Assembly (NCBI GenBank): GCA_965644265.1
Contig: OZ286463.1
Span: forward strand, 89,962,001-90,026,000
From: Glycera tridactyla
Lineage: Eukaryota
DNA: 64,000 bases
Direction: 5' to 3'
Shown here: piece by piece, positions 2,170 through 62,784 of the stretch
Numbering within the stretch: position 1 is the first letter of the stretch
Layout: every line of letters starts with the position of its first letter
The notes under the pieces: model-generated
Told to the model about the DNA's origin: nothing
Databases searched by the model: none
What the model saw: the letters and a program-made list of their open reading frames with translations, nothing else
Made by a program: the position numbers and the translations under genes

Positions 2170-2347
2170 CAGTAAAACCTGTCTTGGGAGACCGCCCCAA
2201 ACGCCAACGAAAAGCGGTCTCTCAAGACAGGTGGTCTCTCATTGGAGATATATTTGACTATGTCAAATAGAGAAGAGCCAATGAGGAGCGGTCTCCCATT
2301 AGAGGGTGGTCTCCCAAAAGAGGGGTCTCCCAAGACAGATTTCACTG
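2170..2347. mobile_element. MITE family A (young subfamily A1), Tc1/mariner-pogo type, 178 bp
   Basis: TA|CAGTAAAACCTGTCTTGGGAGACC...GGTCTCCCAAGACAGATTTCACTG|TA; ~24-bp TIRs, TA on both sides; near-identical copies at 23014, 34865, 43407, 50576, 52624. Confidence 0.9.
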
Positions 2348-2351
2348 TATA

Positions 2352-2527
2352 CAGTTGGACCTGCTATAAAGGGCACCTGTATTAAGCAACCACCTGCCTT
2401 AAGCAACCACTTAAGAAAGTCCCTCCATAGTATTTCTCACTATAATTAACCTGTATTAGACAACCACCTATCTTATACAACCACTTTTCACTGTCCCAAG
2501 GGTAGTTGCTGAATACAGGTTTGACTG
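2352..2527. mobile_element. MITE family E (TAAGCAACCAC motif), 176 bp
   Basis: TA|CAGTTGGACCTG...CAGGTTTGACTG|TA; repeated AGCAACCAC/ACAACCAC motifs in 3+2+1 arrangement; abuts the 2170 element through TATA. Confidence 0.8.
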
Positions 2528-2553
2528 TACTTTCAAAATCTCTCTACCCTCAG

Positions 2554-2654
2554 CCTCGGACACTTTATGAGGAGGTCGTTCCCAAATTATGATCCCTCAT
2601 TACAGGATGCCTGCACTTCAGGAGACAGAATCTGATGATTTACTCCCAGATCAG
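2554..2654 (+). pseudogene. Possible frameshifted exon remnant
   Basis: ctctctaccctcAG| acceptor and CAG|GTGAGG donor enclose 101 nt; adding one base gives PRTLYEEVVPKLMIPHYRMPALQETESDDLLPDQ. A shorter intact exon 2606-2654 is the alternative. Confidence 0.18.
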
Positions 2655-4470
2655 GTGAGGTTTGGGTAAGGGCACTCACTCATCAGTGCATGCCCACCAC
2701 CCCCCATACACCTGATCTGCTCACAGTTGACACTCAAAGATTGCAGCGGCATCACACTTGAGTTGGTTGCTCAGCCACTTGTAAGTGGATGGTGGTGTGG
2801 TGGGCGGAGGTTGGAGACACCACGTGTTTAGTGGTTGATCATGGTATTGATTGATCAGATGCAGAATCAATACACCAGATCTCATCAGCTACCACCTTCA
2901 CACCGGTCACCCTCAGAAGCCCACCCATCCATACCTTGCTGTAACTGTAACCTATTTACACTTGGTCCCTGCTATGCACTCTCAAATTTCCCATAGCATA
3001 TATGAATCATGTTATACTAAATGTAACTCATGTAACACTTTGTAAAATTCTGCTGTTGACAGTCATACCAATTTTCTCAAAATATTTTAGGAATCCTGAA
3101 AATTTGGGTAAAAAGTTCAAATTCAGAAATTGCTGAAATCTTGCTGAGAGTCTCAGAACAGATACTTTCAGGATTAAGAAAATCGAGTCATTACCAAAAA
3201 TCTATCTTCTGATTGACATCACTGTGTTGATTTGAGAATTTTCAGCAAATGTTCTTGAGAATCTTCATCATGTCCACCAGTAGTAATTGCTTTACCCTTC
3301 ACTTGACATTTTTTTATCGCAAAAGTTTTCTAAGAAAATGTTGCTCTGGTTGATGCTATTCTCCCTAGGTATCCGGAGCCGGTGTCCACTGTTTCACGGG
3401 TCTTCTCCATAATTTTGAAAATTGATGGGACAAATGTCTCCAATCAAACATCCTCTGTTATCGACTATCTTTTTCGAAAGACAACTTATCAATGATATTC
3501 ATGGCAGTTTGTAACTGTTGATTTTATGGAAGTCAGTGAACCCACTAGCCTGTGGGCATGAATGCTCAGTTAAGAATAATGCATGGATGTTGTGATCACT
3601 TGTATAGCACGTTTTCATGATAATTGGTAAAGCAGGGACTTTTCTGTCCAGTTAGCCTTGAATATTAGCCAGATGGAAGTGGAAGTGGTGGAATAAACTT
3701 ATAAAGGAGAGAATTAGTAGTGGGAAATATAGTTCTTCAAGAAGAAAAAAAAATGGCTGAATGTTATGAATCAATAGCAAGCGTAGTCTCTAGTGAGAAG
3801 GAGATCTGTATGAATGCACATCTCATATTAAAAATATGGTAATTTGATTTATGATATTAGAGTAAAATTAGTTGAGAAGGGTTGACCTCCTTTACAACTA
3901 ACTTAAGTGGGCCGTATTTTTTGTCACTGCATCAACCTTCAAGTTCGTTCCAGTAACTTCTCTCTGGTTGAGTGCCTGCACCATGGTCTCATTACAAACC
4001 TACCCACCTCAAATGAAATTGCTATAAAAAATCATCATAGCTGGATTGAGGTGCTTTCCAACGCATAAATTGAACATATTGAATGGCAGCATGGGACCAT
4101 TTTTGGCATCCTTCAGCATATATGAATTCCGCTTCTCATTTTTGTGAGGAACGTTTGCTTAGTGATAGTGTAAGACATGTAACATTCAGAGTTGCATGTG
4201 AGAATTAGAATGGTTAATTGAGCTAGGACCACTGAAAATGAGAATGATGCATACTATGAAGCTGTACAAACCCAGATGGAGTGATTATACACAGATAGCC
4301 TGACACAGGGGCAAACGTAACTATCATTCTTCTGGTGAATAATAGAGAGATTCCAACATAAAAATGTCTCATCAAAGCGGAGTCTACATATGTCTGTTCC
4401 ATACCATTTGGTGTATTTTGCAAAATATTTGACAAATAACAATGTTCATTCAGGGAGAGATCAGGTCGGA

Positions 4471-59475: not shown

Positions 59476-59653
59476 CAGTCGAACATGCTCTAAAGACCAC
59501 CTGTCTATAGAGACCACCTCTTTATAAAGACCACCCTCAGCTGCGACCATGGTAGTATTTTCAACCATAAATGACCTCTCTATAAATACCACCTGCCTAT
59601 ACAGACCACTTTTTGATGCAACCGAAGGCGGTCTTTATGGACAGTTTCGACTG
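59476..59653. mobile_element. MITE family B, 178 bp
   Basis: TA|CAGTCGAACATGCTCTAAAGACC...GGTCTTTATGGACAGTTTCGACTG|TA; 3+2+1 motifs. Confidence 0.9.
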
Positions 59654-59890
59654 TAGTTTGAAAACATGTCACAGACCATTGGAAAGATTTATAGTCACTA
59701 GGGACCCACTTGACTGCTCACATGCTCCCACTGTACCAACTGTAGGACCCAAAAATGGCCACAGACTTTGGGTAATTCTCTTGTATCCATTCCATATCAA
59801 AGGCATGTAATGGCAAGTGGTGCATAAAGGCAAATGAATGACAGATGCACAAGATCAACCTGATTTCAGTTGTTATCATTTTTTGATCAG

Positions 59891-59995
59891 CATTGTGGTG
59901 ATTTTCTCTCTGATTTAATTGATTTTTTTCTGTCTTTTGTAGGTGAGTGGATATGTGAATACTCAAATGATGCTGAGGACATGAGACAGGTGTTT
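59891..59995 (+). promoter_or_regulatory. Fused 3'/5' splice site or 47-nt micro-exon
   Basis: gatttttttctgtcttttgtAG|GTGAGT at 59941-59948, 50-nt AG-free zone upstream; second donor CAG|GTGTTT at 59990. Confidence 0.5.
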
Positions 59996-62608
59996 AGTAT
60001 CACATTGATATTATCATGTTTGGATTAGAAAGAAGTTACACATTGGAACCTGTGATGTGATACCACCTCAGATGGCAGACTGCTACCTTGCAGCTGCATT
60101 GGCTTCATTTTCATTCGACATAGTCACATATACCTCAGAAGAAAGACCACTTATTTTGAGGGAGTGTTTTTTGGTGACATTTTCGGTGGTCCAACATCAT
60201 GGTTCTGAGTGCATGATTATATATTTAGTAAGACTCTTTCACATTGTGCTATTTGTGATCTCAAATGTTTAGTTTGTTGCCAAGTGGAAATATGTTTTAA
60301 AAACCAGGACGCCACATCTGGCACTCAGTAAAATTCTATTGGCATAGTTCTGAGCGGACATGGTTATTTTATATGGGTGACAGAATTTTATCAAATTGAA
60401 TTGAAGTTAAACCTCGCAATTTCCTAGCAGTAATGTAGGAAAAGATAGGTCAAACTCATGAAGTTTACCATTGTCTGGAGAAAGTTGGCAGAAATCATGG
60501 GTCTTTGAATGTGGTTGTATTCTCCATGTATGAATTCCATCAAATCTGCCCCCTGATTCTCAGGCACTTGATCCATGGGTGAATTCACATATGCAAATTC
60601 CGAAGCATGACAAGATCATTTCATGCTATACTTGGTGTCTGACTGGAGGCTGGGCACTTGCGGTTAATAATGATCATCTCAGAGAGGTGACAAAATCAGA
60701 GGTGACTTCTATCGTGATCAACTTGGCCAACAATCCTCATCAATTGTGGTCAGCTGTGCCAGACACCGGATTAGTGCTTTATTATCCTTGCCTCCAAGAC
60801 AGATGCTCTTCAATCACCGTATCACACTTGACAAGCGACCCTCTCATAAGAGTCATCCTCTGATAGGGACTGCTTTCTCAGGGCTGCTCTTTTTGTCAAC
60901 AATTCTTGATATACCCGCAATAAGAGTTCACCTTTAAGAGACTGCTTTTCGGTAAAATTCTGGAAATTACACTCATGCAACTCCAATCAGGTTCAGTCAG
61001 TAGATGAAAAGTTTCGGCAATTCTCCAGTGTTTGCTTAAAAGAGAGCAAATGTAGAGAATATCACATCGTCAGGGATTCAAATTTGCCACATCTGCTCCA
61101 TTATTTTATTACCATCTGTCAAGATGACAAAACCACAAACTGTTTTGTTATACTTTTAACATGTTATTAGTCTTAAAAATGAGTTTGAACTAGGTGGATC
61201 AATAGCGTGGCATTCATGTTCTTTATTTCAGACTTTCAACAGAATAAGTATAACCCTCTCTTGAGGGTTCATATATACTCCGCAATGACACCAACTACCT
61301 CTATATTAGGTATTTTCACTAGTGTTTAGATGGTTCAGTCAGCATGAGGATGATTGCTTTTCCATGAATTATGATATGTTATTACATTTGGCCAAAATTT
61401 CTGTACAACATGTATATGTGGCACACAATGTGAAATTAGCACAAATGCCAGTTTGGGTGTGTATGGATTACATTCCTCTGAGCTCTCAATATTGATGTCA
61501 GTGCTCTGATTTGCTGATGCATTCACAAAGAATTGATGCAATTGGGAGAGCCCATGTGTCATTTTCAGTCTCACCCTGTTTCGATATTGTGTTTTTCAAG
61601 TGTTACTTAGCCATGGTTTATTTCTGTTTTCATTCTCCTATTTAGTTGTTAATGACTGTTGAAGGTCCTTGAATGTCTGGCTATAATATTGTGCTCCAGA
61701 CATTCCTATTGAATCTATCTCATGATCAAGTCCATGGAGGTTATTTGTGTTGCATGTCTCATTGTCTCTGTCTCTGTCTCTCTGTGCCTCTGTTTCTGTC
61801 TGTCTGTCTGACTGAGTGTTGGTCTCTGTCACTCTCTCTCCAATGTGGGCTTCCATCTTTACTTTGCCGAGATACTTAAGTCATGGACTTCCACTTTACA
61901 GACAGTAGGACTGAGATTAGGGATCACCCTAAATATCAGGAAAAAGTGTTCTCTTAAAAGAGGTGGTCTCTTATCAGAGGCATTTTTGATTATGCTGAAT
62001 TGAAAAGCTGCCCTGACAAAACAATCTGAGTCTAGGGATTTCTCCATGTGTAGAACAAAGTAGGATTTCATTGAGTGGATATTTCTCAGCATTATGGTAC
62101 GATTCCGAGGAGTTATTGTACCTGGTTCCTGTAAAATATTTGCTTTACCATTCTGGAAATTGGGTAGTCGACAGTGTTATAGTCTGGCTGATCTTTTGAG
62201 AGAGTTATGGTCAATGACCTAAATGTTTTGATGGATATTTTTGGCTTCATAAAGGATGGGCTCATACATGTAGATGCCATCTTTGCCTGATGCATAATGG
62301 ATGCACACAATTAATGTCTCAGTGCCAGCTCAGATGACAGGACAGTTTATCCATGACATACATCTATGTAGTTATGAGGAGCCTACTGTAATCCAATTGT
62401 AGCACTGATATTCCAATGAATTCTCGTAATAGCTAAAATACGACATGCAAAAACATGGAATAAATCCAGTAAGGCGTGTTGACATACTGATCATGGGGTA
62501 ACAATTCTTATGAATGTATTTGGAGCAATGACTCCTAAGTGAAGGATTGGTCGGAGTCAGATCTAAATTATAAAATGTCTGATTGCTTCACCTGTTGATA
62601 TGAGTATA

Positions 62609-62784
62609 CAGTAAAACCTGCTATTGTGTAATCCTGTCCACAGTGAAATCCTGTCTACAGTGAAAGAAAAATCTGGCCTGAACGTTTTTTTTTTCACTAT
62701 AATTGACCTGTATGTAGTGAAATCCTGTCTACAGTGAAAAGAAAAATCTGGGCCGTGACTTTTCACTATAGACAGGTTTTACTG
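62609..62784. mobile_element. MITE family C, full 176-bp form
   Basis: TA|CAGTAAAACCTG...GACAGGTTTTACTG|TA; has one more 17-bp unit than the 55412 and 56542 copies. Confidence 0.92.

What the first reader, a model, noticed from the sequence alone, without database searches (positions are those of the whole stretch)
2170..62784. About six MITE families with different motifs share one blueprint: ~177 bp and 3+2+1 binding-site geometry
Seen in sequence: families A (GAGACC), B (AAAGACC), C (ACAGTGAAA), C' (TAAGxGAAA), D (TAAGCAGCC) and E (TAAGCAACC) cannot be aligned internally by eye. Their full-length copies are nevertheless 175-178 bp, TA-flanked and CAGT-ended, with the same layout. There are three direct motif copies at 16-18 bp pitch (ending near offsets 24, 40, 57), a ~57-bp gap, two more copies (near 115, 132), and one inverted copy in the far TIR. 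The 5' half of the motif (ACCTG/CCTGT) is shared and the 3' half is family-specific. Established: TA duplication marks Tc1/mariner, and CAGT ends plus a bipartite CENP-B-type HTH DNA-binding region are typical of pogo-like transposases. Inference: this is a radiation of transposases that changed one half-site specificity while a fixed asymmetric transpososome geometry constrains minimal element length. I cannot tell whether this grammar is already described.
Basis: partly seen in the sequence, partly recalled or inferred. Interest (0 to 1): 0.7.

Follow-up and report, generated by a model that had tools for sequence, protein, structure and literature searches.

The report
Pogo MITE families share one blueprint
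This mollusc genome holds tens of thousands of ~177-letter jumping-gene remnants in about seven families with one shared layout of protein-landing sites, because each is the two conserved ends of a pogo-type jumping gene joined in register; the same layout was already mapped by experiment in a plant element, so it is real and tidy but largely known biology.

Summary
The window holds 35 loci of TA-flanked, CAGT-ended MITEs (8% of read bases). Full copies are 175-178 bp, with half-sites at offsets 9, 25, 42, ~99 and ~116 plus one inverted site in the far end. Genome-wide, 30,174 of 53,094 exact-end pairs are 174-179 bp (reversed-pattern control: 0).

The families are not unalignable. They align colinearly and share a central box.

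Autonomous 2.9-3.3 kb pogo elements (CENP-B_N + HTH_Tnp_Tc5 + DDE_1, TIGD4-like) with matching ends exist for families B and C'. Related lineages also exist. They are only 40-55% identical in protein yet carry the same end geometry. Their 5' end has sites at 9/25/42/97/114. Their 3' end has a TIR, a 22-bp spacer and two inverted sites.

A MITE is the 5' module joined in register to the 3' module. This predicts 175 bp, and a virtual C' MITE is 86-88% identical to real ones.

The 3 versus 2+1 grammar, including the 22-bp spacer, was footprinted for Arabidopsis Lemi1/Emigrant in 2006. Eleven elements from other organisms keep it too. Shorter forms (156-162 bp; 7,757 copies) also amplified, so the geometry is modal, not obligatory.

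An unchecked first-reader note (s1-302978) had flagged pogo-like MITE sites on other DNA of this genome.

The parts
43405..43586 (+). Family A1 MITE (GAGACC), 178 bp plus flanking TA, 3+2+1 sites
2168..2349 (-). Family A1 MITE, 178 bp
23012..23193 (-). Family A1 MITE, 178 bp
34863..35042 (-). Family A1 MITE, 176 bp
50574..50754 (-). Family A1 MITE, 177 bp
52627..52803 (-). Family A1 MITE; one end not matched by BLAST
17443..17621 (+). Family A2 MITE (GAGACC subfamily), 175 bp
27321..27501 (+). Family A2 MITE, 177 bp
18680..18859 (-). Family A2 MITE, ~177 bp; one flank is AA, not TA
10002..10180 (-). Family A2 MITE, ~177 bp, one end mutated (CACT)
29755..29936 (-). Family B MITE (AAAGACC), 178 bp
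59474..59655 (+). Family B MITE, 178 bp
23440..23607 (+). Family B MITE, ends decayed
51979..52137 (-). Family B MITE, shorter copy (~155 bp)
62607..62786 (+). Family C MITE (ACAGTGAAA), 176 bp
56540..56701 (-). Family C variant, 158 bp, lacking one 17-bp site at the 3-site end (2+2+1)
55410..55573 (+). Second copy of the 158-bp C variant (90.9% identical to 56540-56701)
18874..19052 (+). Family C' MITE (TAAGxGAAA), 175 bp; 86% identical to the virtual MITE built from the C' autonomous element
30848..31027 (-). Family D MITE (TAAGCAGCC), 176 bp, one terminus TAGT
2350..2529 (+). Family E MITE (TAAGCAACC), 176 bp, back to back with the A1 copy at 2168-2349
5527..5678 (+). Diverged A2-like copy
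22031..22189 (+). A2 copy truncated at the 3-site end
26541..26700 (+). Diverged A2 copy
14285..14428 (+). Diverged B fragment
37606..37688 (.). A-type fragment cut by the assembly gap at 37689-37870; not used for any length
51450..51938 (.). Cluster of A and B fragments (51450-51558, 51819-51938)
56949..62015 (.). Further fragments: B at 56949-57031, A2 end at 58634-58659, A1 at 60097-60191, A2 at 61919-62015

Best explanation
These are non-autonomous derivatives (MITEs) of a clade of pogo-superfamily transposons whose transposases are TIGD4-like. They carry CENP-B_N + HTH_Tnp_Tc5 DNA-binding domains and a DDE_1 catalytic core with a DD29D triad.

**Shared end design.** Every autonomous lineage has two different ends.
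- The 5' (X) end carries the terminal repeat plus two more direct 16-17-bp sites (offsets 9/25/42). A ~40-bp gap with a conserved T-rich, TATA-like box follows, then two more direct sites (97/114).
- The 3' (Y) end carries the terminal repeat, a 22-bp spacer and two sites in inverted orientation (62 and 79 nt from the tip).

**What the sites are.** Each 17-bp unit is most likely one footprint of the bipartite CENP-B-type DNA-binding domain. The conserved second HTH would sit on the shared CCTGTC half and the variable first HTH on the lineage-specific half. This is inferred.

**How MITEs arise.** An internal deletion joins X site 4 to the outer Y site in register. The result keeps 3+2+1 sites and is about 175-178 bp long in every lineage. 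The iso-length blueprint is therefore inherited from the parents' conserved ends and was generated repeatedly in separate lineages. The cognate transposases then amplified the products.

**Status of the steps.** Shown: anatomy, offsets, parent-MITE identity, junction, TA duplication, copy numbers, and conservation in other organisms. Inferred: binding, which HTH reads which half, and the deletion mechanism.
For: - **Transposase type.** Pfam finds CENP-B_N + HTH_Tnp_Tc5 + DDE_1. The DNA-binding region aligns to CENP-B 1HLV residues 1-130, E = 3.8e-16. Nearest homologues are named TIGD4/6-like. The invariant D397 and D427 lie 29 residues apart.
- **Matching parents.** Autonomous elements of 2.9-3.3 kb carry ends matching families C' and B, and there are further lineages T and G. 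The X end lies 5' of the gene.
- **Identical offsets.** MITEs and all lineages share the same site offsets.
- **Virtual MITEs.** X[1-96] + Y[-79..] gives 172-175 bp. The C' version is 86-88% identical to real C' MITEs and the B version 73-79%. Lineages differ from each other by about 50%.
- **Junction.** Contigs from four public runs show one uniform junction...AATTG | Y-78, and 500- to 3,000-fold higher depth on the ends than inside.
- **Direct repeats.** X4-X5 and Y1-Y2 are 22-26/34 identical in register in five of the six elements tested; the sixth gave 10/34 because its window was one base out of register.
- **Length classes.** The classes at 175-178, 156-162 and ~102 bp equal the in-register joins X4xY1, X4xY2 and X3xY2.
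- **TA duplication.** Shown by a C' element nested in a B MITE.
- **Other organisms.** Eleven elements at 29-51% aa identity in the DNA-binding region have sites at 9/24-25/41-42 and inverted sites at 48-49/64-66. Shuffles rarely reach these matches.
- **Experimental precedent.** Lemi1 protein footprints a continuous 56-bp block (TIR + 2 direct repeats) at one Emigrant end. At the other end it footprints the TIR, then 22 bp on, two reversed repeats. C positions 9,10,12 / 25,27 / 41,42,44 are given in the Figure 7 legend of PMC1636448.
- **Helix conservation.** The HTH2 recognition helix has a mean entropy of 1.18 bits against 1.72 for HTH1.
Against: - No binding, excision or transcription data exist for these elements. 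The runs found were contigs of uncertain type.
- Autonomous partners were found only for C' and B. None was found for A1 or A2. C, D and E are only 61-72% identical to the nearest sampled parent.
- B MITEs carry AAAGACC at all six sites, whereas the sampled B parents have A[AG]CGACC at the X end. The true B parent is therefore a relative, not one of these copies.
- The link between HTH1 and the half-site is confounded by phylogeny.
- In-register deletion and later selection for the full site set cannot be told apart from sequence alone.
Confidence: 0.78

Rival explanations
1. One reading: the 3+2+1 geometry and its spacing are required for transposition. About 177 bp is then the minimal mobilisable element, and selection rather than origin fixes the length.
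For: - The same class is modal in every family (57% of exact-end pairs).
- The geometry is conserved through complete turnover of site sequence in 16 lineages.
- Lemi1 binding depends on the number and arrangement of subterminal motifs (PMC1636448).
Against: - 7,757 copies measure 156-162 bp, with 2+2+1 or 3+1+1 sites. They include many near-identical B copies, so the shorter form amplified.
- The window holds two copies of a 158-bp C variant.
- Forms of ~102 bp exist.
- L053 has only two sites at its X end.
- The length is already predicted by the in-register join.
Confidence: 0.25
2. One ancient MITE diversified into the families. The autonomous elements only resemble them at the ends.
For: All families align colinearly and share the central box and parts of the spacer.
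Against: - C' MITEs are 86-88% identical over their full length, non-site parts included, to the ends of present-day C' autonomous elements. The lineages themselves are about 50% apart, with transposases 40-50% identical.
- The central box and sites 4-5 are present in the autonomous X ends.
Confidence: 0.05
3. The repeated units are not protein-binding sites. They would act through DNA or RNA structure (site 5, the 22-nt spacer and site 6 form a 17-bp hairpin) or as promoter elements, and the geometry would reflect that.
For: - The Y end is a perfect hairpin candidate.
- The central box is TATA-like and lies 5' of the gene in 15 of 16 elements.
Against: - The three direct sites at the X end cannot pair with each other.
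- In Emigrant the same units are DNase-protected by the transposase.
- In the Lemi-like L092 the ends are swapped relative to the gene.
Confidence: 0.07

Closest known systems
Lemi1 / Emigrant (Arabidopsis pogo-like transposon and its MITE; Loot et al. 2006, PMC1636448)
   Same: - TA-flanked pogo-type ends.
- One end is the TIR plus two contiguous direct repeats of the inner TIR half (56-bp footprint; C positions at 9-12, 25-27, 41-44).
- The other end is the TIR, a 22-bp spacer and two repeats in reverse orientation.
- The MITE is mobilised by a related transposase.
- Offsets and the 22-bp spacer are identical here.
   Different: - The host is a mollusc.
- The transposase has CENP-B_N + Tc5 domains and TIGD4-like relatives, not the Lemi domain set (PMC7386202).
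- From my recollection, not checked here, Emigrant is longer.
- Here there is an extra inner pair of sites (97/114) at the 5' end, many co-resident lineages, and iso-length 177-bp MITEs.
pogoR / TIGD4-like pogo transposons (Gao et al. 2020, PMC7386202; Dupeyron et al. 2020, PMC7325037)
   Same: - Domain architecture and DDD triad.
- Reported presence in Mollusca.
- Nearest database proteins are named TIGD4/6-like.
   Different: In the passages of those surveys that I searched, end architecture and MITE derivatives are not described. A formal phylogenetic placement was not done here.
Sleeping Beauty / Tc3-type IR-DR ends
   Same: Several transposase sites per end. The inner site repeats the inner half of the terminal repeat, a parallel drawn by Loot et al..
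   Different: IR-DR ends are symmetric, with two sites at each end and both inverted between ends. Here the ends are asymmetric, and five of six MITE sites point the same way.
CENP-B and its DNA box (PDB 1HLV)
   Same: The transposase DNA-binding region aligns over the whole bipartite CENP-B domain. From my own knowledge, the CENP-B box is 17 bp, which equals the site pitch here.
   Different: CENP-B is a domesticated centromere protein, not a transposase. Its box sequence is unrelated.
Ping/mPing and other deletion-derived MITEs; Lemi internal deletions (Negoua et al. 2013, cited in PMC7325037)
   Same: MITEs arise from an autonomous parent by internal deletion at short direct repeats.
   Different: Here the repeats are the binding-site arrays themselves. 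The deletion is therefore in register, recurs in separate lineages and gives the same length each time.

Membership tests
MITE (miniature inverted-repeat transposable element) | Short, non-coding, with terminal inverted repeats, a target-site duplication and high copy number | tested here: met
   Length 175-178 bp. CAGTnnAACCTG ends. TA duplication. At least 53,094 exact-end copies.
pogo superfamily (IS630-Tc1-mariner group) | TA target-site duplication | tested here: met
   A C' element at L027 4983-8092 sits in a B MITE. The uninterrupted B MITE has a single TA at that point.
pogo superfamily (IS630-Tc1-mariner group) | DDE_1 catalytic domain with a DDD triad | tested here: met
   PF03184, E = 6e-41 to 5e-45. 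Invariant D397 and D427, 29 residues apart; the first D lies in NMDETG.
pogo superfamily (IS630-Tc1-mariner group) | N-terminal CENP-B-type bipartite HTH DNA-binding region | tested here: met
   PF04218 + PF03221. 1HLV match, E = 3.8e-16.
pogoR / TIGD4-like family (sensu Gao 2020) | CENP-B_N + HTH_Tnp_Tc5 domain pair, and placement in the pogoR clade | tested here: inconclusive
   The domain pair is met and the nearest named proteins are TIGD4/6-like. No tree with reference pogoR, Tigger and Lemi transposases was built.
Lemi family (sensu Gao 2020) | HTH_Tnp_Tc5 alone or with HTH_ABP1_N; placement in the Lemi clade | tested here: not met
   CENP-B_N is present above its cut-off in all lineages. 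No plant or fungal proteins appear among the 120 best hits. Clade placement was not tested.
Emigrant-type end grammar | One end has the TIR plus two contiguous direct repeats of the inner TIR half. The other end has the TIR, about 22 bp, then two repeats in reverse orientation. | tested here: met
   Offsets 9/25/42 and 62/79 from the tip, with a 22-nt spacer, in MITEs and in 5 autonomous lineages. Also in 11 external elements. Compared with PMC1636448.
Emigrant-type end grammar | The sites are bound by the cognate transposase | not testable with these tools
   Needs EMSA or footprinting. Inferred by homology only.

The most novel reading that the evidence does not exclude
The asymmetric end grammar may be an ancient, strictly conserved transpososome blueprint. 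It consists of three direct sites at 9/25/42 on one end and a TIR, 22-bp spacer and two inverted sites on the other. It may be shared by plant Lemi-type and animal TIGD4-type and Tigger-like pogo elements. On this fixed scaffold, lineages would become orthogonal by changing only the first HTH and its half-site. Iso-length MITEs would be its automatic by-product. In what I could read, this has been shown only for one plant element and has not been described as a superfamily-wide rule.
Probability: 0.4. Interest if true: 0.55.

Novelty: new member of a known kind. Interest (0 to 1): 0.4.

Why it matters
- **Scale.** These elements are a large part of this genome: 8% of the window and at least 53,000 intact-ended copies. 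They would be mis-clustered as unrelated families without the shared blueprint.
- **Natural experiment.** Several co-resident transposase lineages keep one site geometry but use different half-sites. This shows how DNA-binding specificity diverges to give orthogonal transposon/MITE pairs, and it suggests which helix to swap when engineering non-cross-reacting pogo vectors.
- **Simple rule for length.** An in-register join of two binding-site arrays explains why independent MITE families can share a length.
- **Age of the grammar.** The match to the Emigrant footprints, down to the 22-bp spacer, suggests the grammar is far older than either host lineage.

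Tried and rejected
**Led nowhere or blocked**
- **Parent of families A1/A2.**
  - Not present in the 28 genome loci I could read.
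  - An A-like element (GAGAGACC sites) exists in another organism's contig (L037).
- **Other-species DNA.** I used the one metagenome scan instead.
- **Expression, transcription start and intron.** Only small runs of uncertain type, kept as contigs, were found. They gave the MITE junction and copy ratio but no transcript evidence.
- **Literature search by terminal 12-mers.** Only unrelated primers came back. No paper on these mollusc MITEs was found.
- **Short MITEs beside the external elements.** None in the fetched flanks.

**Considered and rejected**
- Chance (controls 0).
- A single recent MITE.
- An assembly-gap artefact. Only one fragment touches a gap.

Full report
**1. What is in the window**

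The window is G000:C11:89962001-90026000 of a 2.04-Gb mollusc assembly. It has about 40% G+C and ten N runs.

A search for TA-CAGT...ACTG-TA pairs with matching ends gave twelve elements of 175-178 bp and one of 158 bp. A looser scan for CAGTnnAAnCT ends added families D (30848-31027) and E (2350-2529), both 176 bp. BLAST of representatives against the window, plus the D and E copies, gives 35 loci. That is 5,037 bp, or 8.1% of read bases.

Only the fragment at 37606-37688 touches an assembly gap. All measured copies lie in uninterrupted sequence, so continuity across the gaps is not needed for anything below. No N was filled.

**2. The layout is real**

In every family the shared half-site CCT[GC] starts at offsets 9, 25, 42, 97-100 and 114-117. 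One further copy is inverted, 9 nt from the far tip. The units are 16-17 bp long. Their 5' half (A/T)CCTG(T/C)C is common to all families. Their 3' half is family-specific: GAGACC, AAAGACC, AGTGAAA, AAGCRAAA, AAGCAGCC or AAGCAACC.

Genome-wide, the strict pattern TACAGTNNAACCTG-N{60,400}-CAGGTTNNACTGTA has 53,094 matches against 0 for the reversed control. Of these, 30,174 (57%) fall in a 6-bp length window of 174-179 bp. The window is about 7-fold richer in such copies than the genome mean.

**3. Corrections to the observation**

- The families do align. A MAFFT alignment of all families is colinear with very few indels. It shows conserved columns at the termini and at all half-sites. It also shows them in a central T-rich, TATA-like box and in part of the spacer before the far repeat.
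- Family A is two subfamilies, A1 and A2.
- Length is modal, not fixed:
  - 7,757 copies are 156-162 bp, and a class near 102 bp exists.
  - The 156-162 class has one unit fewer, as 2+2+1 or 3+1+1 sites. It includes many nearly identical B copies, so it amplified after the loss.
  - The window itself holds two copies of a 158-bp C variant.

**4. The parents**

The genome has at least 150 DDE_1 (PF03184) places. In the 28 loci I could read, I found complete TA-flanked elements of 2.9-3.3 kb whose ends match the MITEs:
- C' type: L013, L014, L015, L016, L027.
- B type, two sublineages: L017, L018, L024, L025 and L022, L023.
- A TAGTGACC type (T): L019.
- A CTTGTCC-TAAGC type (G): L001-L004, L028.

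Their proteins carry CENP-B_N + HTH_Tnp_Tc5 + DDE_1. The DNA-binding region aligns over all of the CENP-B domain of PDB 1HLV. The second and third catalytic aspartates are invariant and 29 residues apart. The nearest database proteins are called TIGD4/6-like and come from bivalves, gastropods, amphioxus, a hemichordate and cnidarians. This points to pogoR in the sense of PMC7386202, but I built no reference tree.

The lineages are 40-55% identical in protein, and B1 versus B2 is 64-65%. Copies within a lineage reach 98.8-99.1% DNA identity. A C' element nested in a B MITE shows the TA duplication directly.

**5. Why the MITEs share one length**

With the three-site (X) end first, the transposase gene is on the + strand.

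All sampled lineages have the same ends:
- X end: half-sites at about 9, 25, 42, the box-containing gap, then 97 and 114. Individual sites are degenerate in some copies, and the offsets are 2-3 nt smaller in lineage T.
- Y end: the terminal repeat (24 nt), a 22-nt spacer, then two sites in the opposite orientation, with CCT at 62 and 79 nt from the tip. In lineage G these sites read CTTG rather than CCTG.

A MITE position of about 100 is both about 97 from the X tip and 78-79 from the Y tip. The MITE is therefore X[1-96] joined in register to Y[-79..], which predicts 175 bp.

Virtual MITEs built this way are 172-175 bp long. The C' one is 86-88% identical to real C' MITEs over the full length, non-site parts included. 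The B one is 73-79% identical to real B MITEs. Virtual MITEs of different lineages are only about 50-69% alike.

In C' the crossover lies in the CCTG of site 4. Contigs from four public runs laid on L013:3984-7281 show the same junction (...AATTG before Y-78). Depth on the two ends is 5,000-16,000, against 0-10 inside.

X4-X5 and Y1-Y2 are imperfect direct repeats. They match at 22-26 of 34 positions in register in five of the six elements tested; the sixth (G_L001) gave 10/34 because its Y window was one base out of register.

The other length classes are the other in-register joins:
- X4xY2 = 158.
- X3xY2 = 103.
- X3xY1 = 120.

I infer that deletion between the two binding-site arrays generated the MITE form separately in at least the C' and B lineages.

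**6. Is the geometry constrained?**

A scan of metagenome contigs gave 80 loci encoding relatives of the transposase. Eleven distinct complete elements were found, at 29-51% aa identity to the query in the DNA-binding region. All have direct sites at 9/24-25/41-42 on one end, except L053, which lacks the third. Most have a second cluster at about 96-137. The other end has inverted sites at 48-49 and 64-66. Shuffled ends rarely reach the observed matches, typically 0-40 of 500.

The site sequences in these elements are completely different: GTGGACA, GTGAACA, TAACGA, AATTTAAT and others. Position is therefore conserved while sequence turns over, and all sites of one element change together. That is what selection by a cognate binding protein predicts.

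Across 15 lineages the HTH2 recognition helix (FKASNGWL..F..RH) is well conserved, with a mean entropy of 1.18 bits. The HTH1 helix varies (1.72 bits) and groups with the variable half-site:
- GKTQ.Q with ..GACC.
- GLTQL with AAGCR.
- S(K/I)(S/G)S with GTGRACA.

It is confounded by phylogeny and remains an inference.

**7. Comparison with what is known**

Loot et al. 2006 (PMC1636448) footprinted Lemi1 protein on the Arabidopsis Emigrant MITE.
- One end gives a continuous 56-bp protection: the TIR plus two direct repeats of the inner TIR half.
- The other end gives the 23-bp TIR, a 22-bp unprotected spacer, and a 29-bp block of two repeats in reverse orientation.
- The Figure 7 legend lists C positions 9,10,12 / 25,27 / 41,42,44.

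That is the same grammar, down to the offsets and the 22-bp spacer.

I found nothing in the searched papers on the following points:
- the same grammar in animal TIGD4-like elements;
- the inner site pair at the 5' end;
- several co-resident lineages with different half-sites;
- the in-register origin of iso-length MITEs.

PMC7386202 does not report Lemi in Mollusca, and it assigns the CENP-B_N + Tc5 pair to pogoR and Tigger. I therefore do not file these elements as Lemi.

**8. Limits**

- No parent was found for A1/A2. C, D and E have only distant sampled relatives.
- B MITEs carry AAAGACC at the X sites, whereas the sampled B parents carry A[AG]CGACC there.
- There is no binding, activity or transcript evidence.
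- An unchecked first-reader note of this scan (s1-302978) had flagged pogo-like MITE sites on another piece of this genome. It did not change my reading.

**9. Verdict**

The radiation of transposases and the conserved asymmetric geometry hold. The uniform length is a by-product of joining two conserved end modules in register, and shorter forms also amplify.

I rate this as a new member of a known kind, with interest 0.4.

Noticed in passing
L019:3900-4565 and L019:7677-9992: A 74-bp tandem satellite, with dozens of units. Each unit begins with an A2-type MITE terminus (TACAGTGAAACCTGTGATGAGAGACC...). The array lies on both sides of the T-type autonomous element, so this looks like a MITE end turned into satellite DNA.
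   Followed up: no
G000:C1:2386320-2395554 (listing): A tandem array of about 1,192-bp period. Each unit holds a 177-bp chimeric element with an E-type end on one side and a B-type three-site end on the other.
   Followed up: no
L013:5380-5810, L024, L023, L019, L028, L001: In every lineage the first transposase ORF ends right after ...ALCASMTG(K), and the next ORF resumes at GEK..PLVIGK. This indicates an intron at a conserved position. In B1 copies L024 and L025 the intron happens to be open in frame, giving a 644-645 aa read-through ORF.
   Followed up: partly
autonomous elements L013, L023, L024, L019, L001: X-end sites keep a CpG (A[AG]CGACC, AAGCG..), while the Y-end sites of the same element carry a CpG-less version (AAAGACC, AGTGACC, AAGCA/AAGTG). 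This systematic left/right difference is seen in all four lineages and is unexplained.
   Followed up: partly
window:43480-43500; L013:4065-4081; all families: The conserved central box, read on the other strand (TATAGTGAAAAA), resembles the element's own terminus (TACAGTGAAAC). The 5' end may have arisen by an old duplication of the terminus. The box is also TATA-like and could be a promoter.
   Followed up: no
L092:64-2194: An Emigrant/Lemi-like element (AATTTAAT sites) from a soil or plant metagenome contig. It has the same grammar, but the two end types are swapped relative to the transposase gene.
   Followed up: no
L026:4862-4968: A ~103-bp B-type mini-MITE: three direct sites followed directly by the 22-nt spacer and the far repeat (the X3xY2 class).
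   Followed up: partly
window:12161-12233 and window:37921-37980: The same ~60-bp sequence lies immediately before two different assembly gaps. A repeat probably breaks the assembly there.
   Followed up: no
window:2349-2350 and window:18859-18874: MITEs of different families sit back to back or 14 bp apart (A1|E and A2|C'). This suggests local insertion hot spots.
   Followed up: no
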